Below are positions 2,733 to 50,635 of a DNA stretch of 64,000 nucleotides, one piece after another. Under the pieces are notes generated by a model that searched no databases, had not been told where the DNA came from, and was given only the letters and a program-made list of their open reading frames with translations. This DNA is from Ramazzottius varieornatus. Lineage: Eukaryota; Animalia; Tardigrada. Positions within the stretch are counted from its first letter, which is position 1. The number at the start of each line of letters is the position of its first letter. The stretch covers positions 5,260,448 to 5,324,447 of the forward strand of contig BDGG01000002.1 of assembly GCA_001949185.1 (NCBI GenBank). Direction: 5' to 3'. The translations under genes were made by a program, and so were the position numbers.

Positions 2733-5485
2733 TCACTCCTTCACGACAGGTCCTCCAACCGTGATCTGCTTCAGCGTACTCGTCAACTGCAAAACAGCAA
2801 AAGGTTGACACACGATCTGACACGTCTAGACAGATCAATTATGGCAACTTACCTCTTCGAACTTCTGAATGTTGCGAACAAAGAAGTCGCCATACCGCGG
2901 TGCAACTTTCGTATCGGCAATGTAAATCATGTTTCCATCAATGTAGAAATCCAACTCTGGTCTGCACTCCAATCTTCCTTCCAACGGCGACCCATGAGTA
3001 TGTACCATGTTCGTCATCTTATGCTGGAACCAGAAAACCTTGCAGATATCATACGGTATAAGAATATGGAGCAAGGCGAAAGTAAATCGACATACCTTGT
3101 AAGTATACAGATGCTGAAGCAGAATATCTTCAGCCATCTCCAAAAAGTTGGCCAGCTTGGGTACTGGCATGGAGGTATACAGCTTCAGGTAACTACAAGT
3201 ATGATATTCGAATAATTCAACAGTAACGACAGCCGTTGAAACTTGGACAGGTTCGGACCGAAAATTACCTCTGGATGGTGGACATCATATTCTGAGCTAC
3301 ATACTCTTGCTTGAGGATGCTCAGCTGATAGTTTTGGAACTCCTACAAGACAGTTGATTATTGGTACAAATGATTTCTTTTATTCTCGCAAAAGTCGGTC
3401 CGGCATACTTTGAAGCTATTCGGTTGAAGATCATCGTAGTTTGTAGCAGGAGTGATGAACTTGGGCATCCCTTGGTTCAACAACTTTTCGAATTCTTCCT
3501 CTTCGTTCCTATTGATAAAACTCATAAAAAATCTGATACTTTGAGCATGACAAAGGGGGAACACCGAAAATTCTGTTCGGAAATTCATTCACGTATATTT
3601 TGCCTTCGACTCACATTTTCTGGATTTTGCTGAAGCGATCGCCCAGTTTGTCTCGCAGGGACGAGCTGATGGATTCGTCAATGTGCATGGGGTGCAGCGT
3701 GAGGCAGACAGCCAAGCAGTTGTACATCTTGTCCTGCGTTTTGGTCAAAGTGTCCACTTGATAGGTTCGACCAACGGTGGCGCTCTGGTCGAAGATGCCA
3801 TTGCCAACTGCCGCGTGGTTCCTCGACACGTTGGTTGTTGCTCTTTGCTGGTACAGAAGCAAATCACAGAACGTCCGAATGGCGTCCTGGTACCGACGCA
3901 TCATCATGTAAGCAACTCCGACATGGTAGTAGGTCGTCACTTGACAAGCCTGCAGTCCGTTTGCTTGGAGATGCTAAGATGTGGAAAAGCAATCCGTGTT
4001 AACAAGAACGCATGTTGGAGTCAATAAGGTTCGTCATAGCTGACATTACCTTCTTTCCCAGTTCGACGTTGTCCAGAGCCTTCAACGCGGTGTGGTAGTC
4101 TCCGAGGAGACAATGAAGTCGCATGAGACTGATGAGGCTATAGTATCCGAGCATCTTGTACATCGGATGGTCGGCGAACGAACCGCTTTCGAAGTTTGGA
4201 TCACCTACGACGTAGAATTTCCGTCTTGAGATATCCACATAAAAGTGTGACTTTCTATTCGGCACGTGGTAGTTGATACTGACCCCCCGAGTTGTGGATC
4301 TTTAGCTGCTCTTGGATTCGGCTTCGTTCCACGAGCTTTAGCCAGATGTTCATCACCACGGTCACATTCCAGATCTGCGAAGTGAGTAAATGCTCGATAA
4401 ATAAAAAACTTTTCGAGCGCAACAAGAAAGCTAACAGGACTCTACCATTTCGTTCTCTTTCAACATTTCCTTTTCTTCTTCGTGCAACTTGTCAGCCTTC
4501 GCTCGATACGTGCAGAACGCAGTGAACTGGTACATGAACTCGTCGATTATGTCCCACACCCATTCGTTAGGCAGCCCAATGTCCAACGGCGTGTCGCGAT
4601 CTGGGAAAAGAACTGTACTTACAGTCAAAGGTCTTCAGATCGTCAAGTGCACCAACTCGTACTAAGCTCAGGTACTTACTCAAGATCAGATCGAAGATCT
4701 GCCAATAGTTCTGGTAAGACTCAAATCGCTGGTCGATCGACAGACTATCGCGCTGAAGGACCAAAAGATTAGTGTAAAATCACAACCAGGTGCTACTCCG
4801 ACACTCGCAATTATAGAAGGAAACTCTTACCGAGCTCTCGTAGATGTGTCTGTAGTACAGTTCCTTGTACAGCAACGTGAATACCCCTTCTACAAGAATA
4901 CATAATGATCAGCCTAACGAATATTCTTCATCGCTTGGACAAAAAGTAGGAGCAATGCTTACCAGGTAAGTCGTCGATTTGACTCTCGACAATCTTCGGG
5001 TGCGGCCAAGCGCGCTGTTGATAATAGTTCTCACTCCACTCTCGGAATCTATATAAGCCAGCATTTTCACCATGCATGTCCGATATCCGCAAAAATTAAC
5101 TAATGAGTAGTTCTTACCCAGCTTCGTACAGATGCTGCATTCGAACAGTATCATGGTCCTTGATAGCCTTCTTGAGGTCTTGCAAGTATTCAATGACTTC
5201 CGGTGGGATGTCGGAGTCGTCATTAGCTCCTAATGGTTCTCGTTCTTGCCAGTGTTGGTGTTGCTGCTCTCTGTAACCTTGCTGTCTACGTCCACCTCCA
5301 CCGTCTCCTCCATACCCTCGATCTTGTCCGTAACCCCGATCTTGTCCATATCCTCGATCTCTCCCATAGCCCCCACCGCCGTAGCTGCCGCCATATCCTC
5401 CTTCGTCATGGAACCTTCCACGGTTATCGTCATTGTTGTAATTGTTATATCCGCGCCGGCCACCGGTGGCAGCTGAGTAGGACAT
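2733..5485 (-). CDS. EIF3L: Eukaryotic translation initiation factor 3 subunit L (multi-exon)
   Basis: Motifs IPPEVIEYL, LPNEWVWDIIDEFMYQF, YKMLGYYSLISLMRLHCLLGDY, TTYYHVGVAYMMMRRYQDAIRTF and LDFYIDGNMIYIADTKVAPRYGDFF; last exon LTSTLKQITVGGPVVKE*. Confidence 0.95.
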
Positions 5486-20345: not shown

Positions 20346-20520
20346 TGGTTGACCATTGATCTTGGTAGATTAACCACTAGTGGATAGTCGTTGGTCTTGC
20401 TGTCTTGACCACTAGTGGTTGACCATTGGTCTTTCTAGGTTGAACACTAGGAGTCGGCCATTGGTTTTGCTATGTTTGACCACCGATACTAGCCATTGGC
20501 TATGATAGGTTGACCGCCCA
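20346..20520. repeat. Degenerate 35-bp minisatellite, about 5 units
   Basis: Units start at 20346, 20381, 20416 and 20451; consensus approximately TGGTTGACCATTGGTCTTGCTAGGTTGACCACTAG. Confidence 0.75.
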
Positions 20521-33715: not shown

Positions 33716-34058
33716 TGGTGAGCCGGGCGATTCAAAAGTCCACAGTACTTTTACCGCGGGTGCATGCGCGGAGAAACTCTATGCGCCGTGAAATACTTTT
33801 TCCGCGCATCCACCCGCGGACTAGGCGAGAGTNNNNNNNNNNNNNNNNNNNNNNNNNNNNNNNNNNNNNNNNNNNNNNNNNNTTTATCCGCGCATCCACC
33901 CGCGGATAAAGTCGAGTTTTTCCGCGCGTACACCCGCAGATAAAGTCAGCTTATCCGCGCATCCATGCGCGGAGAAACAGTTAAACCGCGCATGGAGTTT
34001 CTCCGCGCATGCACCCGCGGTAAAAGTACTGGGGACTTTTGAATCGCCCGGCTCACCA
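33716..34058. mobile_element. MITE-like/foldback DNA element with 70-bp TIRs and TA flanks, spanning an assembly gap
   Basis: 33716-33785 and 33989-34058 are inverted repeats with 2 mismatches (TGGTGAGCCGGGCGATTCAAAAGTCC...); TA on both sides; internal ~33-bp repeats TCCGCGCATCCACCCGCGGA. Confidence 0.85.
33833..33882. other. Assembly gap (50 N)
   Basis: Run of N inside the repeat-rich element. Confidence 1.
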
Positions 34059-40609: not shown

Positions 40610-41050
40610 TATTATATCATGTCGTTAAGTTACAGCTTCAGTACTCTGGCTTGCTATGCTTTGCCTTCGCAGCACTTTACCGTCGAAATGTCTTCAAGGG
40701 TTTGCGAACTATGCCTTCAACGTGTCTTCGCTGCATATTGACTAGAACTAGCTCAACCAAATACCACACCACCGAACACCGTACCCGCACATCGCTACTT
40801 GATTATTTGATTTCCTTTTTTTCGCACGGTAACCGCTGACTGGGCGACATACCGTGAGATTTCACGAATTTCCCGCTTCTCCGTATCTCTTCGATTCATG
40901 ATTCTTCGAATTTTTGACACCTGCCGTGACCTGCAAAATCAAAAGCCATCTTCATCACAAGTTGCTGCCTGGAACATCCCCTCCCATTGTGCGGACAATC
41001 ACTGTTTGTCGGTTGAGTGGAAACAGCGTGTCGTTCTGTTTTACAGCGCC

Positions 41051-43883
41051 ATGGAGAAGACATCGACGTGCAGTGCCCCTTCACACGGAGGCATCCCTCC
41101 GCCGATCATGACCATCAACCCTGCTCCCAGCACATCAAACAGAAACATGAAGAAGGAGCTGAACGACCACACAGAAATGCGTCTCGAAGATTTCATGAAG
41201 AAATTCAGCATAGGTACGTCTCTAGAGAACCTCCGATTGATGATCACCCAGATCAAGTCGCGCATAATCTCGACCCACACGAAGTTGCGGAAAGAGGTCG
41301 GTAGCTGGTCATAGCTTCGCACTTTCAGTGTCGAATCAGTTCTTTCTCCCGACTGCTTTTGCTGATTACTGGTGCTTGTGTCGCAGGTGACGATGTATGG
41401 GTCATCAGTAAGGGACAGTGGCACGAAGCTAAGATCATTCTGATCGAAACGTACAAGTATCCCGGAGATGAGACGACATCCGTGCCCATCTACAGAATCC
41501 ATTACCCGGGTTGGGGAAAACGGTAAGCAGGCTCCGACATCCATCGGATGCGGCAGAAGGAAGATGTCTGATGCTTTCTCCTCTTCAGGTATGACGAGTG
41601 GATGTACAGCGATTCGCTGATGCTGCAGAACACAGAGAATAACGCCAAGGCCTCGGCCGAAAACGGCGCCTTGATGGAGGCCAGGTATAAACTCTGGGGA
41701 AAAAATTCACGTTTGTTTTCTCCGGATAGACTTATGCATTACGTTGCGTGATGTTTAATTTTGCAGTGGAATCAACGGCCCAGGCAGACAAGACCAGTTC
41801 TTTGCAGATGACGGCGAAAAAAGCCAGTGTGTTTCAAAGCTCCAATCATGTGCCTATCAACGGAGTATCTCCCGCCAGAGGCCGAGGAAAAGGTGAAAGC
41901 AGAGGAGGCGCGACTGCCAAACCTAGGGGTAACTTCAAAAAATTTTACCTCTAGTGCCGAAGCAGTCGAAGTAATGCGCGAGTTCAACCGAACATTTCGG
42001 TAGTGTACCGTGACTCTCGAATGTCTGGAAAATTATTTATGCTGCATGTTCATCCCATTGAATTTTCCATTGAATTTCGCTCACACGATATTTATTTTCA
42101 ATATTTTTCCAGGTACGACGAGCAGTAAACAAGCGAGAATTGATGCAGGACTGTCTGCGGGAGATAATATTGCAACTGCGGGCTGTCAGTCGCCGGAGCC
42201 TCCCAGCATGGCTTCAGCGCTCGAAAGCGAGCCGACCACCTTGACCGACAACGGAAAAGCGCACAGCTTAGAGCCAGCCAGTTCATTTGAGAAGTCGATT
42301 AACCGACTGGAAAACCCATCCAGTATCAAGAAACCGAAAGAGCGAAGAACACTGGTGCGAGGAAAAAGGTGCCAGCCGGTGAGAGCTATTTATTACGGTT
42401 CGAAAACCGCAGTGATGACGGAGAATCCAGCACAGGCTATTACGTATTTGCTTGTTTTTCAATTAGCCATGACCGAAATGCTACCTGTGGGCACCATCGT
42501 TACAGCCGTTCCTGCTGGAAGTCTTGCCGGAACTCCAGGTCAGCAGTTCATGGTCCAAAGCAAGGTGGAGAACGGTAAGATCGTCTCCTTCCTGGTGCCC
42601 GTCCAACAAGTTACCGAGGTGGAAGAAACTGTTCCCGAAGGTTCGTACCGTAGTTTCAAGTAACGGCTGGATTGTAGTTGTTTCTCTGTAACGGGTGTTG
42701 GCATTGCATGAACGGTCTGTACAGGCCGGCGAAGTGGTTACTGTACGAGCCGGCGAAGTGGTTGCTGTACAGGCCGGCGAAGTGGTCACTGTACGGGCCG
42801 TCCGAGTTGTCTGCATACAAGCCAGCGGATTAACGCAGATCCGCGAGATTCTACTGTTATCTGAGATAACTATGTTTGAATGACAAAGTTACGTGATCTG
42901 TTCTATAGGTACAGTGACTATGGATATGCTTGAGCGAGAACACTCACCAACCGAAAAACCACGGAAGATGCCACGGAAGGAGAAGGATGTTCTTACTAAA
43001 ATTCGCCGACAATGGTAAGAGGCTTTTAAGAGACATACGGTTTTGGTTCTTTGCAGATGAGATATCATGAATGTCATGACTTGTATTTTGTTTAGGGTTA
43101 TGGACAACTTCCGGAAGGGAACTTCTGTGACCTGTCAAACAGTGGGATTGGTACATTTTTCGCCAGGTACTGTTTTCAGTATTGCAGATGCATTTCGCAG
43201 TGGAAACTGAGCTGTCCAGTGAGATACGTGGAAGCGTTTTGTGTTGGCTACCTATTGAGGATTGTCGGTTAAATATTTGTAGGTGGTCGGCGAAAAAGAA
43301 ACAGGATCACGGTTCGGGCGTGCTGAAGTCCCTCGGTCTCCTCTTCAAAGAAGTGCATCAGTGTCCTCCTTCCAAATCGAGCGGAAAGAAAAACGCAAGG
43401 GGAGTGGTCGACCGAGACAATTTGAGGAAATGTGTCGACCTTTCTCCTGCTGGTGAAAAAGAATTCCTGAAGTTGTGCGGTCGAGAAGCATTAAACCATC
43501 TACGTAAGCCTCGAACGATGTCGTTCGCACGACGCAAAGTGGCGGACAATGTAGTGGACGAAGACACCGATGTTAAGGCATACTTGAACTCTGAGCTCAG
43601 ATCCGTAACGATCAGAATATAACGATGAGACTGAACGGAAAGTTATCTTTCAGATGAGGCTGAAAAAACAACCAAGCAACCGGAAAAGTCTGCCGATACC
43701 AAGAAGCCTGAAGGAGCCAAGAAGGCTGGTGGGACCAAGAAGAAGTCCTCGGAGGATAAGTCCAAGTCGAGGTCTCTCGCCAAGAAAACCGCCACAACCA
43801 CCGAAGAAACCATCGAGGTACTGAAACAGAAGTTAGCCAAGAGAAACGGGAGTCTTCCGTCGATCGTGCGGTCCGTTACTTAA
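41051..43883 (+). pseudogene. MULE accessory gene: chromo-barrel (Tudor-knot) domain + RFX-like winged helix + Lys-rich tail; one 1-nt frameshift
   Basis: Spliced exons read FSIGDDVWVISKGQWHEAKII...YRIHYPGWGKRYDEWMYSDSLM (MRG15/Tip60/ARID4-type chromo barrel). Later RQWVMDNF...FARWSAKKK...SLGLLFKEVH...GKKN...NLR resembles the RFX DBD. Exon 43096-43166 is 71 nt where 72 is needed. The 3' end is uncertain. Confidence 0.75.
42717..42831 (+). repeat. 24-bp tandem array (CTGTACAGGCCGGCGAAGTGGTTA) in accessory-gene intron 42641-42908
   Basis: Units at 42717, 42741, 42765 and 42789, plus a degenerate fifth. Confidence 0.9.
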
Positions 43884-44179
43884 TGAGTCTCTGAAGAGTT
43901 CACTTTGTTACTTATGCTTTCGGTTTGAAGCCCAGGTTTTGGAAATATCGGTGATTTGGCCGAGTGCATCCGAACTGCTTTCCTACACTTCATCGAGACA
44001 TTCTTTGTGCGCTTTGGTTTCTGGTTCCTCATCTGGTTCTTGGTTTCTCGTGCGTCCGTGGAATGTCTGGACGAATTAGCTTCCCTGTGTGAATAGTGAT
44101 CACCATTCTCGATCGCGATGCTCTTGTCAAAGTTTCGATGTCTCCACGAAATTGGAAGTATGGCACTTTTCGGTGTCCT

Positions 44180-45295
44180 TATAAGCTGGACAAAGCCATG
44201 GTCGCTTACTACCTCGGAAACAGGAAGATCGTCGAAGTCCTACCAGCTTTCAACAAGTCAGCTTTCGCTAAATGTTCGACTTCCGGTAGAGCTGTCTGTT
44301 TCATACAGATCGTCTGCACTTTCAGGTCGTTCAACTTTGCTGGTAAACGGATCGACGAAGCTCTCCGAGAGCACCTCGAAGCCTTCCGCCTACACGGCGA
44401 ATCTCCCCTCATCGCTCACTTCATGGAGCATTTCGCTGCCAACTGGCACACCACCAATCGCATGCCCTTCCGGCACCAAGATTGCGCCTTGCGTTTAGCT
44501 GTCCGCTTCTTGCGTCGTGACGACACAGAGATCCAGCAAGACATCATGCGGTCGCTGAGGCTCCTTCTCGGTCTCCAGCCTCACTTCTTCTACCGCATGT
44601 CTCGTCAAATAGCCAATGCGCTTTACCAGCTCTTTCAGGCCAATGGATCCTCCAGTATCAAGTCAAAGGATGACTGGAAGCTTTTGTGTACTCTGCTGGA
44701 ATGCGCAGGTGCGGGAGTACGCCTGCCGAAGGTAACGCTCAGAGAAGCCATGCCGAAGTCGGAAAGTCAACCTGTCAACGCCGTCCAACCTGACAACGAG
44801 GTAAAAACGTTTCACCAATCTTTTTCGTTCATCTCAACAACTCGGTGTTCCTTTTCCTCTTTACTTAACTTGTAATAATTACTAGATGTAATATTAGTGG
44901 TCTTTCAAGCACATGCATACACGAAACTGAGCATGCGCTATTGTGAGAACGTATGCAGTTCTATGCGTTGACTTTTCTATTATTGATTTTTGTCTAGTTT
45001 CCAGGTTGATAGAGGTATACATCGGACAGCGAGCTCCACGAAATCCATGGTAGTCCCACGGGTAGCAATACCTGGTCGATGGTCGGTAGGGAAGGTGAAG
45101 TGGTGGAGACGGCAGGGAACCCGGAAGGAAACTTGTTGTCCATACCGGTGGATATCATCCATCACGATACGGACGCTTTCTGTTTGGCCATTGACTCGGT
45201 ACACTTTCTCACCCGAGAGACCGGCCAAGTTACGGTGGACAACGCTTTTGCATTGTCTGTGCGTCTTTGTGGAAGCCAGCATGAACAGTTTAGTC
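44180..45295 (+). pseudogene. GBF1: Captured fragment of the Arf-GEF GBF1 (partial Sec7 fused to HDS region), with introns and frameshifts
   Basis: LDKAMV...RIDEALREHLEAFRLHGESPLI (Sec7) joined directly to LRLAVRFLRR...DDWKLLCTLLECAGAG, then frameshifted DRG(Y)TSDSE, HDTDAF...FLTRE and VFVEASMN. Confidence 0.88.
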
Positions 45296-46064
45296 GGTGT
45301 TTAGTCGGCTTTCACAGTCTTTTTTTCTACTCCTGTGTAAAGTACGATTACTCTAATGACAGGGTATCTGAAAATCTTCCGGAGGAATCCCAAAAGAAGA
45401 AAAGTAGCTTAGATGTACCCTTGCGGAGGAATTCAATACGAAAGAGCTGACAGATTCACAAGAACATTGCAGACGGCAGACAATCTCAAAATCGCTGGTG
45501 CACACAGCTCTGCCGGCTCACATTTGCAACTTCGCCGGGTTGTACGGTACCAAAACCAAAAACAGAAAGCTTGACACCAAATTACCTTCAGGTTGAACAA
45601 CGTTCAAACTGTACGGGCATTGTGTTGTAGAGCAACATAGTACCGTTATCGCCAGAGCTGCTTGAAGTAAGTTAAATAGAATTAAATTACGTATCCTGAA
45701 CGGAAACTTTGAATTACATTTCGCTAGCATCCGTCAAACTTCCTAGGCTTTTGCTCACCACAACATCCTTCGAGGAGTCAAACTTTGGATGTCGAGTCTT
45801 TACACAGCGATTGTTCATGCGATAGAGACGCATTCGAGGTAACGCAATAACACCGTCGCCACCATTCTCGAAATCTTGCTCTGTGTGAGTGACGAGTATG
45901 TCGAAATTCGCAGGTCTTTCGGCAAACAAAGTTCGGCACCCGGGGCATTGGTAACCCATACGAGGATTTGGATATTTCTTGACGACAAACTTATGGGTAC
46001 CGCCATGGTTTGCCTAAACGAAACAAGTATGTTATCCCAGACATGGTAGTCTAAATTCATGCAT

Positions 46065-46135
46065 GGTCACTACGCCGGCGTGTACATCAGTAGGGACAAC
46101 TACGCCAGCGTCTCCTTTGCTAACACTGACGGCAT
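46065..46135 (-). repeat. GCCGGC-motif array (probable transposase intron)
   Basis: Cores at 46074, 46104 and 46128. Confidence 0.6.
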
Positions 46136-46777
46136 CTATGGAGGTTTACCAATTTTGCAACCCTCGCCCTTGTAACAATATCCTTCTTCGTCGAAGTTCA
46201 TTTCGACAGGTTCCTTGTCTTCACGGGTTGTGTAACCGGATCCGCTCAGATTCTTCATCTTTCGCCCAACCTTGTGACCACCAACACTTCGCACGAGCCA
46301 GCTGCCGAAGGGACGCAAATTCTTCTCTAATTTCAGCCATTCCACCATCTGCGCCAAGTTTCCGGACGCCGCGGTCACGGCAATGATATGTTTGCAAGCT
46401 GGGTCTTTATTCTGAGTGAACTGCAAACAACCGCATTTACCTTCCCCGGAAGTAGTGCGGATCTCGACGAAGTACCAGCAGGGCTTCTTCTTGTCTGTAG
46501 ACCGAACTTTCCGAACGACCGAGGAGTTCCATTTTCGTTTATACTGGGTCGTTTCTTCCGCGGAAAGCTTAACCATCCAGCCTTCGTCAGCAGGGCCGTC
46601 CATAAGCTCCACGGCCTTGTCCCAGCTGGCGCGAAACATGTCGGGAAGTCGGTGGTGGCAAAGTCCGTCAGCACATTGGGCGGTCTTGTTCCATCTCCCG
46701 ACAATTCGACCTACAAACATAATGTCACAGTTACAGACTAGCACTATGTACCTGTTCTACTATTAGACGAACCAACA

Positions 46778-46905
46778 AGACTTCACCGGCACAAAGCGCG
46801 GCAGCTCTGCTCGCGTAGGCTTTGGCAACTCCGACGGCGGACAATGCAGCATCTTCGCCAACAAAACGTAACACCACCGGCCTACTTGCAACAACTCCGC
46901 TGGTA
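46778..46905 (-). repeat. 24-bp-period GCCGGC-motif array (probable transposase intron)
   Basis: Cores at 46785, 46809, 46833, 46857, 46876 and 46899. Confidence 0.7.
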
Positions 46906-47919
46906 CTTACTTTTCGACTCGATGCAACGACAACCACGGTGTTCACGTTGCACTTGGGAAACAACCGTTGCACTTTGGACATTATGTGGCTATTGTCGTG
47001 TGCTTTTTCTCGCGACAGGAGAAGGTCTTCTCTGTACTGCTCGGCTATTCTGTATCGGCCTTGATCTTTCAGGGCCTGGAACATGAACACAGTTTCATCG
47101 GCGTACATCTTGAGCAACCTCTCAACCACTTCCCGGGGATCGTTGTGCGTGCCAAAAAAGGCTTTGAGCGTTTTGTTCATGGCCTCGGACAGATTAGTAT
47201 TAGGAAGGTCGCGCGAGAAACCCATCTTTTCACATGCCGGTAGGATTAGTTTCTCGACAAAGTTCTTCTGATGGTGTTTCTCAAACTAGTGCTGGAATTT
47301 GTCATCGCCCAAAGAGCTCTTCATCTCTTTCCACTTCTGGAGATACTGCTCTTCCGAAACTGAATCTACCAGCCCTAGAACATGCTTCCTCACACCAGCT
47401 ACGTTGCGGTGGTACCCCAGTACACAGTTCAGCACGAACGACACATGCGAAGAGGGTACGGGCTTTCCGAGGAAGTATCTCTTGATACCATCTCGGATGA
47501 GTAGAACGCAGAGCGTATGGTTGTGTCGAGGGAAAGCTTCGCGGAATGCGTCGTACAGTGCTCGCTCGCCATCGGTGATGAAATCGAAGCGGAAGTCTTT
47601 TGACATCACATCGACACCTGCATTCACGAGACATTCTCGGAGGTAATTAGCGAACACCGACAACGAAGCTTTCGTCTTCCTCTGAGTTAGGCATGTTGGT
47701 CCGATCAGCAGAGCAGGCTTTCCTGCCTTCTCGTTCACAAGATAAGGATGTTTGATGACTATGACCACCAGATACATGTTGCACAGCTGGAAAGTCAAAC
47801 CGATCTGCAAGCGAAGCTTCACTGCAAACAGAAAACCAAAGGATTAATACCCCATTCAGATGCGCATCACTACAAGACGAAAATCAGCTCAGTCTACAGT
47901 GCCTGTTGATAAGGCGACC

Positions 47920-48080
47920 GACAATGTTACCGGCTCGTACTTCAAGAATTCCGTCATATGTACACTGACAACTCTACCGGCCTATGAACGAACTAATCCA
48001 GTGGCATGTAGATTACCAAAACTGCCGGTGTTTACAGCGGAAACATCGCTGGCGTGTACTTTGTCAACATCGCCGGAATA
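47920..48080 (-). repeat. 24-bp-period GCCGGC-motif array in transposase intron 47822-48109
   Basis: Cores at 47929, 47953, 47976, 48000, 48024, 48048 and 48072. Confidence 0.8.
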
Positions 48081-48944
48081 GGCAATTGCTTTGACCTTAA
48101 TCGACTTACACTTTAGCTTTTGGTCGCCGTTCGTCGCTATCAGTCCAACGTGGTACGGATCTACCACGACGAAATTCTCAGACTTCGATCCATCCTCGTT
48201 CTGGTACTGACGAAGAATGACCCCTTCCTTCCTTCGCAGGTAGCTTTCCACGTCTTCTCCGTATGTGTTCTTGTTGACCGTGTTTCTGATGGTCATGACC
48301 TGTCGCATATCTTTCGTTCCATAATATGGGTTCACCTCGCGGTCGATTTCGGGTATAGTTGACGCAACTTCGAGCACGATGTCTCTAGGGCTCATGGGCT
48401 TGCCGCGTGCAACAGGTGACGCTAGCTTCTTGATCGCGCTTGTGATAGCGCGGTTGGTGTAGGTTTTCCCAGGCGGGAATGGTGCGATCTTGCTTTCGTC
48501 GGCCCATACATACTGGATCACGAAGAAATTCTCGACTGGCTTGCTGCAGCTCTCTGACGACACAGTTGCAAGAAGACGCCGCTTGAAGCCATTGGGCTTC
48601 CCATTAGGTCAACTGTACCAGTCCTTCTTCATGAATAAGAACGGCGTCTGGTCGTCATCAGGCTTGCTACCACTACCAAGCCGTTCATTTGATTCTCACC
48701 ATCTGCCGTTCCCGTCGTCCAGAATTAGTCCGTAGATCCGTTCTCTTTGCTCGGGCCGGAAGGAAACGGCAAACCACGCTTGGCCTTGGAAGCGCTGAGG
48801 TATTCGGTGATATCTGTACGCATCAAGGACTTCTGGATTACACAGCCAGGCGAGAACTGACGCATCGCTTTCCACCGTTTGGAAACAACGACAAAGATTA
48901 TTTCTGCAGAAAGCAATATGATGTGAGTTGGATTTCACTACGTT

Positions 48945-49036
48945 GACAACTCCGTCGGCGTGCACACCAGCATCCTCATCGGCTTATACAACGGCATCTT
49001 CACCGGTTTATACAGTAAAAACTCTGCCGGCATGTA
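48945..49036 (-). repeat. 24-bp-period GCCGGC-motif array in transposase intron 48904-49060
   Basis: Cores at 48954, 48978, 49002 and 49026. Confidence 0.8.
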
Positions 49037-49539
49037 TTGAAAAGAAGCAGCTTGACTCACATCTCATAACATGGTCCCAGAGCGCTGTCCGCCACGGGAG
49101 CTCCTAAGGCAAGATTTCCACGTTCAGAAAATGTAACCACTGGCTGAGATTATCGTTTTGGCTCATGGTCTGATACAGAGAACGACGTCTCCCTGCAACA
49201 GGTAAGTGGTCTCGTTATCGCTGGAGTCACTTGTGCGCTGCTCATAATCCCGACTACTTACGGGGTAATGCACATGTGCACTGGCTCATTAGCGCTGCTC
49301 TGCGTGGAGGCGCCGGTGATAGCTGATGCGTCGTCGTCGTCGTCGTCACTTTCCAACATATATACAACCGACCTATCAGCATTCTTCACCGAAGAGTCTT
49401 TGAAGTTTGCAAAGTTCCTGAAATAACCAATCGATATATTGCTTGCAATGAATATTGCATTTGTGGACTACATAGTGCAAATAAACCACAGAAACACCGT
49501 ACATATCGTCATCTCAATCGGCGAGTACGGCATGTACAC

Positions 49540-49720
49540 GGATTTCGCCGGCGTGAGGAGTAACGTCTACGCCGGCGTGTGGTCTGCCGTCTTCACCGGC
49601 GCTCAATGACAACTGAGACGATATGATACGGACTTCGCCGGCTTGTGCAGTGGCATCTCCGCCGGCGTGTAAAGTGATAACTTCGACGGCTTATGCGAAG
49701 ACAACTTCGCCGGCGTGAAC
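49540..49720 (-). repeat. 24-bp-period GCCGGC-motif array in transposase intron 49418-49781
   Basis: Cores at 49547, 49571, 49595, 49637, 49661, 49685 and 49709 (CTTCGCCGGCGTG on + strand). Confidence 0.88.
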
Positions 49721-50635
49721 ATTTGCAGGTCCAGTAGTTTATAAGTGTTTTTGAGATACGTTGGAAAGTTTGAAAACGTACCTTCCAACTCCAGAAGAGG
49801 TGCTCGGAATATTAGGATCGTCGTCGAGGATGACAGAATTCATAATCAGTTCGTCCGACTCGTCTTGGTTGTCCCATTCCGCGTCGAAAGCGCTTGTAGA
49901 ACGATCGGGGAGTATATCTTGACTGATGTCCTCAGTTTTCAGGCGTTTGACACCCCCACTGCAGCCACTGCTGTTGGGCGAACCAGATGGGAAGATACCA
50001 TCGAACACTATCTCGTTGTCGTTATCCTCATCTGAAATATGCGATGAGTGTTCCATGGCGAGGTGGCAGCGAAAGTCAAAACAGATCCAGGAAGAAAGCG
50101 AGGAGAAAGGCGGAAACAAGTGAAAAATAATTTTTCTTGCGTTGCAAACCCAAGCAACTGGCTTGGCCGTGGCCGCTATTTCGGCTGCGGCGTTTCGGTA
50201 TGCTGAGCGTATATCGTTGTGAGGGGTACGAGTTACGGTGCGGTGTTACGATTATTTTTCGAAATTAAAGTGCAGTACGGTACGAGTTTAGTAGTTGTCT
50301 GGATACGCTGAAGGTTATACTGAAGGCAAAATTCGCAAACCCCCGAAGACATTTTGACGGTAAAGTGCTGCGAAGGCAAAGCATAGCAAGCCCAGAACTC
50401 TATCCTACAGTGCCACTGTTTTTCAATCGTTTGCAAAGCTGCGAACAAGAGGAAACTATAAACTGTAATTTTTTGACGTTTCGCATGCTTCCGAGTTGCG
50501 CAGTTTGCACACGGAAGTCCTGTCACATCCCAGTGACCGTCCGGCCAAGTAAGCCCTTTTGCTATTAGGGCTATGTTATTGGAGTTTATGTTCAGCTTAT
50601 GTTCGATTGCTCTTAGATGGACTGAAGGTGGATAG

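What the first reader, a model, noticed from the sequence alone, without database searches (positions are those of the whole stretch)
42717..49720. Six intron-confined arrays of one 24-bp-period CpG-rich motif, oriented with transcription in both element genes
Seen: arrays at about 42717-42831, 46065-46135, 46778-46905, 47920-48080, 48945-49036 and 49540-49720. The sense-strand consensus is TGTACA(C/G)GCCGGCGAAGT(T/G)GT in both genes, even though the genes are on opposite strands. Spacers diverge strongly while the core and the 24-bp phase are kept (e.g. 48000/48024/48048/48072 and 49637/49661/49685/49709). Four arrays lie in introns with clear donors and acceptors; two lie in probable introns. 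I saw no such array elsewhere in the window. Inference: conserved spacing with divergent spacers suggests selection for phased protein-binding sites (accessory protein or transposase), as with VANC target motifs, or an RNA-level splicing/export signal.
Basis: partly seen in the sequence, partly recalled or inferred. Interest (0 to 1): 0.85.

Follow-up and report, generated by a model that had tools for sequence, protein, structure and literature searches.

The report
Conserved motif arrays in transposon introns
A jumping gene of the tardigrade Ramazzottius varieornatus carries short tandem arrays of one 24-base motif inside the introns of its own genes, and a very distant sister family keeps the same core motif in the same introns, so the arrays are probably docking sites the element needs, although what binds them is untested.

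Summary
Six 24-bp-period arrays, about 31 units, plus a weak seventh at 45499-45546, lie in a 9.75-kb Mutator-like element (window 40648-50392; 72-bp inverted ends, 9-bp target duplication) of Ramazzottius varieornatus. All six sit in GT-AG introns.

New evidence:
- A second MULE family has saturated synonymous divergence from this one (pS 0.80) but carries 24-bp arrays with the same core (TGyAyAnGCCGGCGA) in the homologous introns. That argues for selection.
- The motif is not a genome-wide satellite. It occurs only in these two MULE families and in one PIF/Harbinger family, just 3' of that transposase's stop codon.
- "Oriented with transcription in both genes" fails in the second family.
- The terminal repeats lack the motif.
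- CpG o/e is 1.03, so there is no sign of methylation.
- Five of six introns show no excess RNA structure.
- Units are gained and lost in 24-bp steps, so the "phase" is probably repeat mechanics, not selected spacing.

Best reading (0.35): docking arrays on DNA for an element-encoded protein, like VANC targets in Arabidopsis VANDAL21. A pre-mRNA signal is nearly as likely (0.25).

No RNA-seq could be obtained. Other first-reader notes of this scan describe intronic arrays in other transposon copies of this genome (s1-794874, s1-808993).

The parts
40648..50392 (.). Whole Mutator-like element (family A), 9,745 bp. This is the longest of at least 6 copies.
   Evidence: blastn against other copies at 95-97% identity (C9 copy 86-88%), all ending at these coordinates.
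40648..40719 (+). Left terminal inverted repeat, 72 bp. It holds TTGCCTTC-type sub-repeats and no array motif.
50321..50392 (-). Right terminal inverted repeat, 72 bp.
40639..40647 (.). Target-site duplication, left copy CAGTACTCT. The right copy, CAGAACTCT, is at 50393-50401.
   Evidence: 8 of 9 bases identical.
41036..43885 (+). Accessory gene, multi-exon. It has a chromo-barrel (Tudor-knot) exon at 41359-41523 and a fast-evolving C-terminal part.
   Evidence: Exon homology with family B. Pfam Tudor-knot E 3.5e-4. C-terminal exon is 32% identical between A and B.
42641..42908 (+). Left-gene intron, 268 nt, GT..AG, holding array A1.
   Evidence: A probably homologous family B intron is at L038 2027-2188.
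42717..42833 (+). Array A1: 5 units, sense to the left gene.
45714..50060 (-). Transposase gene (MULE domain, SWIM-type CxC..CxH finger). Gene model RvY_05206 covers part of it. This copy has in-frame stops.
45499..45546 (-). Degenerate cluster of about 3 units 3' of the transposase stop codon (3'UTR or intergenic), in sense orientation.
46014..46150 (-). Transposase intron i5, 137 nt, holding array A2 (46065-46140, 3 units).
46711..46910 (-). Transposase intron i4, 200 nt, holding array A3 (46778-46907, 5-6 degenerate units).
47822..48109 (-). Transposase intron i3, 288 nt, holding array A4 (47919-48086, 7 units).
   Evidence: Gene models on other copies splice it out.
48904..49060 (-). Transposase intron i2, 157 nt, holding array A5 (48941-49036, 4 units).
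49418..49781 (-). Transposase intron i1, 364 nt, holding array A6 (49521-49736, 7 units in two sub-arrays; the second is partly palindromic).
49193..49261 (-). Transposase intron i1b, 69 nt, without an array.

Best explanation
The arrays are intronic minisatellites built from one cis-element of about 15-18 nt, TGyAyAnGCCGGCGA plus a family-specific 3' flank (GAAGT in this family; GAGCT or GACCT in family B). Units are gained and lost by slippage in 24-bp steps, while selection keeps the core. The most likely mechanism is that they form multivalent docking platforms on the element's DNA for a protein the element itself encodes. The best candidate is the fast-evolving part of the chromo-barrel accessory protein. 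That protein would mark the element's gene bodies and keep, or set, its expression state, as VANC does at motif arrays in VANDAL21 introns, but without DNA methylation.

Shown here: the arrays, their intron placement, their restriction to three transposon families, and core conservation beyond synonymous saturation.

Inferred only: that a protein binds them, which protein it is, and what binding does.
For: - Arrays and 24-bp period are confirmed.
- Family B is 46-63% identical at protein level, with pS 0.80 (saturated) and Ka 0.34. It has arrays with the same core and period in the homologous introns. The family A matrix finds 12 and 16 minus-strand hits in two B copies, against 1.6 and 1.25 expected.
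- The motif is not used by the host. Two-unit patterns hit only families A and B and one Harbinger family. Single 11-mers outside these elements occur about as often as my own chance estimate predicts (about 25 against about 27). This points to an element-encoded rather than a host factor.
- The 3' flank of the unit differs between A and B. The accessory protein's C-terminal exon is its most diverged part: 32% identity, against 73% for the chromo barrel.
- Arrays change by whole units between copies, as VANC21 target arrays do (PMC5735166).
- In family B all arrays share one absolute strand, whichever gene they lie in. That is easier to reconcile with DNA-level than with RNA-level reading.
Against: - No binding data exist.
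- The RFX-like winged helix proposed for the accessory protein could not be detected exon by exon.
- The accessory protein is not homologous to VANC, as far as Pfam shows.
- The terminal repeats and subterminal DNA lack the motif, whereas VANC21 also binds terminal and intergenic DNA.
- Every array in a transposase transcript is in sense orientation: A has 5 introns plus the 3' cluster, B has 5 introns, and Harbinger has 1. A DNA site does not need that.
- The Harbinger family has the array but no chromo-barrel gene, so it would have to be a free-rider.
- There is no CpG-methylation signature, so the VANC read-out (demethylation) cannot apply.
Confidence: 0.35

Rival explanations
1. The motif is a pre-mRNA signal, read on the sense transcript by an RNA-binding factor. 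Possible factors are a splicing enhancer or silencer, a retention or export factor, or the Tudor-knot domain of the accessory protein. The signal would control how much spliced transposase mRNA is made.
For: - All arrays lie in transcribed non-coding sequence, either introns or just 3' of a stop codon.
- Every array inside a transposase transcription unit is in sense orientation in three families, and the left-gene array of family A is also sense.
- Pfam describes Tudor-knot as an RNA-binding chromodomain knot.
Against: - The left-gene array of family B is antisense to its gene.
- No host gene uses the motif, which is odd for a host splicing factor.
- About seven left-gene introns and intron i1b have no array.
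- There is no conserved RNA structure: z is about 0 in 5 of 6 introns. There is no Rfam match.
- In a compact element introns are almost the only free non-coding DNA, so intron confinement is weak evidence.
Confidence: 0.25
2. The arrays are neutral minisatellites. One ancestral repeat spread between introns by ectopic conversion or template switching during gap repair, and persists by slippage without any function.
For: - Units are gained and lost between copies.
- The same absolute orientation of all arrays in family B fits spread by direct duplication.
- Internal deletions with 1-7 bp microhomology show frequent template switching in this family.
- Between copies the core is not better kept than spacers.
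Against: - Synonymous sites between A and B are saturated, yet 12 or more arrays in two families keep the same 8-nt core, the same upstream TGyAyA and the same period, while other intron sequence is unalignable.
- Conversion would move whole units, but the 3' flanks are family-specific.
- The between-copy comparison has no power, because exons also decay at the same rate.
Confidence: 0.15
3. The arrays are internal transposition enhancers. A second DNA-binding domain of the transposase, distinct from the one that reads the ends, would bind them, in the manner of phage Mu's internal activation sequence or the internal enhancer repeats of the P element (my own knowledge).
For: - The transposase has a long N-terminal region before the catalytic domain.
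- The arrays are element-specific.
- The right-hand arrays all face one way.
Against: - The ends carry a different repeated motif and no copy of the array motif.
- A Harbinger element with an unrelated transposase carries the same units.
- Deletion derivatives that lost several arrays still exist as copies, although it is unknown whether they moved.
Confidence: 0.1
4. The arrays are source or target sites for small RNAs (piRNA or siRNA) that the host uses to recognise these transposons.
For: - Tandem repeats in transposons are common small-RNA substrates (general knowledge; the RNAi link is also discussed in PMC5735166).
- The motif is shared by three transposon families only.
Against: - Elements should lose, not keep, a host recognition tag over saturating divergence.
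- No small-RNA data were available.
- There is no hairpin potential in 5 of 6 introns.
Confidence: 0.05
5. The arrays are translated in-frame 8-residue repeats of the proteins, not introns.
For: - All six reading frames of the unit are open.
- Gene model RvY_05206 reads 30 residues into array A4 before splicing.
Against: - Protein homology between A and B stops exactly at GT and resumes after AG.
- Five of the six array-bearing introns have lengths that are not multiples of three. The sixth (i3, 288 nt) has an in-frame stop at 47982-47984.
- Gene models on other copies skip the arrays.
Confidence: 0.02

Closest known systems
VANC21 target-motif arrays in Arabidopsis VANDAL21 (Hosaka et al. 2017, PMC5735166)
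   Same: - Both are Mutator-superfamily elements with an accessory gene.
- A short motif accumulates as tandem repeats in the element's own non-coding DNA, including introns of its genes.
- Repeat number changes quickly between copies.
- Related families differ in motif detail, and the accessory protein has conserved and highly variable parts.
   Different: - The tardigrade accessory protein has a chromo-barrel and no detected similarity to VANC.
- The arrays are absent from the terminal and upstream regions.
- The core is shared by two very distant families rather than changed.
- The genome shows no CpG depletion, so DNA demethylation cannot be the output.
- Binding is untested.
TnpA-binding 12-bp subterminal repeats and the GC-rich downstream control region of maize En/Spm (my own knowledge)
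   Same: Both are reiterated short motifs inside a DNA transposon that dock an element-encoded regulator, and both include a GC-rich repeat region in transcribed non-coding sequence.
   Different: En/Spm motifs sit at the ends, in both orientations, and also serve transposition. Here the ends lack the motif.
Periodic A/T clusters (PATCs) in C. elegans germline introns (my own knowledge; Frokjaer-Jensen et al. 2016)
   Same: Both are intron-resident periodic DNA signals that act on the expression state of the gene that carries them.
   Different: PATCs have a 10-bp helical period, are AT-rich, occur in host genes and are genome-wide. Here the period is 24 bp, the core is CpG-rich and the arrays are found only in transposons.
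Ordinary internal minisatellites of transposons (general knowledge)
   Same: Both are tandem units of 10-100 bp with copy-number variation between copies.
   Different: Several separate arrays share one conserved core in homologous introns of families that have diverged to synonymous saturation.

Membership tests
Mutator-like element (MULE) | Long terminal inverted repeats | tested here: met
   72-bp inverted ends in family A and 79-bp in family B.
Mutator-like element (MULE) | Target-site duplication of 8-11 bp | tested here: met
   9 bp, CAGTACTCT and CAGAACTCT.
Mutator-like element (MULE) | Transposase with the MULE (PF10551) catalytic domain | tested here: inconclusive
   The exon at 47286-47822 matches PF10551 at E 0.002, 19 bits, below the 27.6-bit cut-off. 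Relative P0090 carries PF10551, and RvY_10115 is named a MULE-domain protein by UniRef. A SWIM-type CxC..CxH motif was seen by eye.
VANC-type anti-silencing system (VANDAL) | Motif accumulates as dynamic tandem repeats in non-coding parts of the element, including introns | tested here: met
   Precedent read.
VANC-type anti-silencing system (VANDAL) | Accessory protein homologous to VANC | tested here: not met
   The only Pfam match in the accessory gene is Tudor-knot, and the other exons have no family. No direct comparison with a VANC sequence was made.
VANC-type anti-silencing system (VANDAL) | Accessory protein binds the motif | not testable with these tools
   Needs EMSA, DAP-seq or ChIP.
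VANC-type anti-silencing system (VANDAL) | Binding causes loss of DNA methylation | tested here: not met
   CpG o/e is 1.03 in the window and 1.08 in the element. CpG sites do not diverge faster between copies. This is indirect evidence that there is no germline CpG methylation to remove.
Minisatellite | Head-to-tail units of 10-100 bp with unit-number variation | tested here: met
Genome-wide satellite | Many arrays outside the transposon family | tested here: not met
   At zero mismatches nearly all two-unit hits lie in MULE A or B or the Harbinger copies, and the reversed control pattern gives 0.
Known RNA family (Rfam) | Match to a curated covariance model | tested here: not met
   Only two sub-threshold chance hits, neither in an array.

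The most novel reading that the evidence does not exclude
This would be an animal counterpart of the plant VANC system that does not depend on methylation. A transposon-encoded chromo-barrel protein would recognise the element's own intronic motif arrays (on DNA or on nascent RNA) and license its expression. Motif flank and protein would co-evolve between families, and an unrelated Harbinger element would free-ride by carrying the same units.
Probability: 0.25. Interest if true: 0.85.

Novelty: new variant of a known kind. Interest (0 to 1): 0.6.

Why it matters
Sequence-specific self-recognition by a transposon-encoded protein at motif arrays is so far known, to my knowledge, only from plant VANDAL and Spm elements, where it works through DNA methylation. 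Here the array architecture of an animal Mutator element has outlasted synonymous saturation in a genome without a CpG-methylation signature. If the arrays are bound by the element's own chromatin-reader protein, this would be a compact, testable animal model of how a DNA transposon marks itself. It would also supply a ready-made cis element and protein pair for tardigrade expression tools. If instead the arrays act on the pre-mRNA, they would be an unusual case of a transposon controlling its own splicing through repeated intronic elements.

Tried and rejected
- **RNA-seq evidence.** Intron status rests on homology, GT-AG boundaries and public gene models.
- **DNA of relatives in other species.** The relatives from ENA contigs (P0090, P0091) and the third chromo-barrel family could therefore not be inspected.
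- **Metagenome scan for a two-unit pattern.** It gave 42 hits, all on contigs of 58-75% GC with unrelated repeats (bacterial-looking), and none carries the TGTACA module. Irrelevant.
- **Core versus spacer conservation between copies.** Divergence is uniform at 3-4% (10-13% for the C9 copy), including exons. The copies decay neutrally, so the test has no power.
- **RNA secondary structure.** Only intron i1 is more stable than shuffles (z about -4 on both strands, because of an internal palindrome). The other five give z of about 0.
- **Rfam.** No match.
- **Array motif in the terminal repeats.** Absent.
- **Arrays as the tail of the 140-bp repeat next to the Harbinger array.** Rejected. About 37 other copies of that repeat end before the array.
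- **Arrays as deletion hot spots.** Junctions show ordinary 1-7 bp microhomology and only some lie in arrays.
- **RFX-like winged helix in the accessory protein.** Not detectable exon by exon.
- **Translated 8-residue repeats.** Rejected.
Full report
**What is there**

The window is Ramazzottius varieornatus contig C2:5260448-5324447. Gene model RvY_05206 lies at 48865-47289.

The six arrays sit inside one DNA transposon, window 40648-50392 (9,745 bp):
- It has 72-bp terminal inverted repeats and a 9-bp target duplication, CAGTACTCT and CAGAACTCT.
- A transposase gene runs on the minus strand from about 50060 to 45714. It has a weak MULE-domain match and a SWIM-type finger. This copy has in-frame stops at 47286, 48696 and 48609.
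- A convergent accessory gene runs on the plus strand, about 41036-43885. Its exon at 41359-41523 matches Tudor-knot/chromo-barrel at E 3.5e-4.
- A captured Sec7 fragment lies between the two genes.
- Five other copies at 86-97% identity carry different internal deletions.

- TRF finds period 24 at 42717-42800 and 49546-49601.
- The 18-nt consensus gives 11 hits at up to 3 mismatches, against 0.03 expected.
- Phased print-outs show about 31 units in six arrays.
- The logo is cTGTACAnGCCGGCGrAGTtGyCa, with most information in GCCGGCG and AGT.
- Autocorrelation over the six introns is 0.385 at lag 24 and 0.353 at lag 48, against 0.249 +/- 0.020 at other lags. Exons show nothing.
- A weak seventh cluster lies at 45499-45546, in sense orientation, 3' of the transposase stop.

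**The arrays are in introns**

Protein-level homology with a second family stops at GT and resumes after AG at every array. The refined introns are:

| Intron | Coordinates | Length (nt) | Array |
|---|---|---|---|
| i1 | 49781-49418 | 364 | A6 |
| i1b | 49261-49193 | 69 | none |
| i2 | 49060-48904 | 157 | A5 |
| i3 | 48109-47822 | 288 | A4 |
| i4 | 46910-46711 | 200 | A3 |
| i5 | 46150-46014 | 137 | A2 |
| left gene | 42641-42908 | 268 | A1 |

- Five of the six array-bearing introns have lengths that are not multiples of three. The sixth (i3) has an in-frame stop.
- Public gene models on other copies splice the arrays out (P0007, P0003, P0005, P0089). RvY_05206 reads 30 residues into A4 before using a later donor.
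- About seven short introns of the left gene lack arrays, so arrays are not a feature of every intron.

**The motif is not a genome-wide satellite**

- The 18-mer at up to 1 mismatch gives 17 genome hits against 0 for the reversed control. All but one (C12:1156379) lie in copies of this family.
- Two cores spaced 24 bp apart, at zero mismatches, hit almost only three transposon families.
- Single 11-mers outside them occur at about the number my own estimate gives for chance.

**The key new result: a second family**

A second MULE family (B) is represented by L038 352-7899, with 79-bp inverted ends, and by L041 2486-9152.
- It is 64-70% identical in exon DNA and 46-63% in protein.
- Its synonymous sites are saturated against family A: pS 0.80, Ka 0.34.
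- Its non-array intron DNA does not align with family A. Yet 24-bp arrays with the same core sit in the homologous introns. Typical units read GTGTATGCCGGCGAGCTC or TGCACATGCCGGCGACC.
- A 15-nt matrix trained only on family A finds 12 and 16 minus-strand hits in the two B copies, against 1.6 and 1.25 expected. The plus strand shows no excess.
- Neutral sequence cannot keep this. Concerted evolution alone would let each array drift to its own unit. So the core is under selection, or is continually re-selected during turnover.
- The 3' flank differs by family: GAAGT in A, and GAGCT or GACCT in B.

- In family B the left-gene intron array (L038 2108-2155) is antisense to its gene and lies on the same absolute strand as the transposase arrays. 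"Sense in both genes" is therefore not a rule. In family A it is also confounded with symmetry about the element's centre, because the genes converge.
- A PIF/Harbinger element (L030; DDE_Tnp_4) has four units almost identical to A1 units. They lie at about 4668-4764, just 3' of the transposase stop, in sense orientation, in three copies. So the arrays are neither MULE-specific nor always intronic.
- Copies differ by whole units. C14 has one more unit in A1, and gains and losses in A6. The kept 24-bp "phase" is what slippage produces. At 2.3 helical turns it would not put sites on one face of the helix.
- The terminal repeats carry a different sub-repeat (TTGCCTTC-like) and no array motif.
- CpG o/e is 1.03, and CpG sites do not diverge faster between copies. 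A methylation-based role is unlikely.
- RNA folding shows excess stability only in i1, on both strands, caused by a palindromic sub-array. The other five introns have z of about 0. Rfam gives nothing.
- Between copies, core, spacer, exon and other DNA diverge alike.

**Mechanism**

The motif is used by no host locus but by three transposon families, which points to an element-encoded reader. The accessory protein has a well-kept chromo barrel (73% identity between A and B) and a much faster-evolving C-terminal exon (32% identity). That parallels the family-specific flank of the unit.

The closest precedent is VANC21. It binds a short motif that accumulates as fast-changing tandem repeats in VANDAL21 non-coding DNA, including introns of VANB21 and VANC21 (PMC5735166).

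My ranking:
1. Docking arrays on DNA for an element-encoded protein: 0.35.
2. A sense-strand pre-mRNA signal: 0.25. It is favoured by the uniform sense orientation in all transposase transcripts and disfavoured by the family B left array.
3. Neutral minisatellite: 0.15.
4. Internal transposition enhancer: 0.10.
5. Small-RNA substrate: 0.05.
6. Translated repeats: 0.02.

Binding, the identity of the binder and the effect of binding are all inferred, not shown.

**Limits**

- For these reasons, relatives outside this genome and a third chromo-barrel family were not examined.
- A metagenome scan returned only unrelated contigs of 58-75% GC.
- Other first-reader notes of this scan mention intronic arrays in another copy (s1-794874), a 12-bp motif arrayed in transposase introns of another element (s1-808993), and a chromo-RFX gene with motif arrays in a CACTA-like element (s1-795238). 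I could not check them. If they hold, they would support the view that each family pairs its own arrayed motif with an accessory protein.

Noticed in passing
window 47286-47288, 48696-48698, 48609-48611 (minus strand): The window's transposase copy has three in-frame stop codons where family B or other copies have sense codons. This longest copy is therefore a pseudogene.
   Followed up: partly
window 44096-44875: An ORF with a Sec7-domain match (E 1.2e-16) lies between the two element genes. It is present only in the window copy and, in part, in the C2:2.51 Mb copy. This looks like a captured host gene fragment.
   Followed up: no
L030 4754-4893 (C11:1285754-1285893): A repeat of about 140 bp with about 37 other copies at 74-81% identity across the genome (MITE- or SINE-like) is inserted next to the Harbinger array. 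Its other copies do not continue into the array.
   Followed up: partly
G000 C19:288720, C10:1308009, C5:1647345: A third group of chromo-barrel exons, 57% identical to the window's, with no two-unit GCCGGCG hit nearby at zero mismatches. It may be another transposon family with a different arrayed motif, or none.
   Followed up: no
window 43841, compared with copy C2:2509586-2518350: The other copy on contig C2 has 104 bp at this point that the window copy lacks. It may be a lost piece of the accessory gene's last part.
   Followed up: no
deletion junctions of copies on C4, C7, C14, C9 and C2 (window equivalents 42787/46682, 47315/48016, 42378/46516, 46751/47921, 43249/45784, 41719/46310, 44263/45365): Internal deletions mostly join at 0-7 bp microhomologies, as expected from abortive gap repair after excision. 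At least three of the breakpoints fall inside array-bearing introns.
   Followed up: partly
window 49546-49601: The second half of array A6 is nearly palindromic: the two-core pattern matches on both strands. It makes intron i1 the only intron with excess folding energy.
   Followed up: partly
window 20346-20483 and 33883-33962: Unrelated tandem repeats with periods of 35 and 34 bp lie elsewhere in the window.
   Followed up: no
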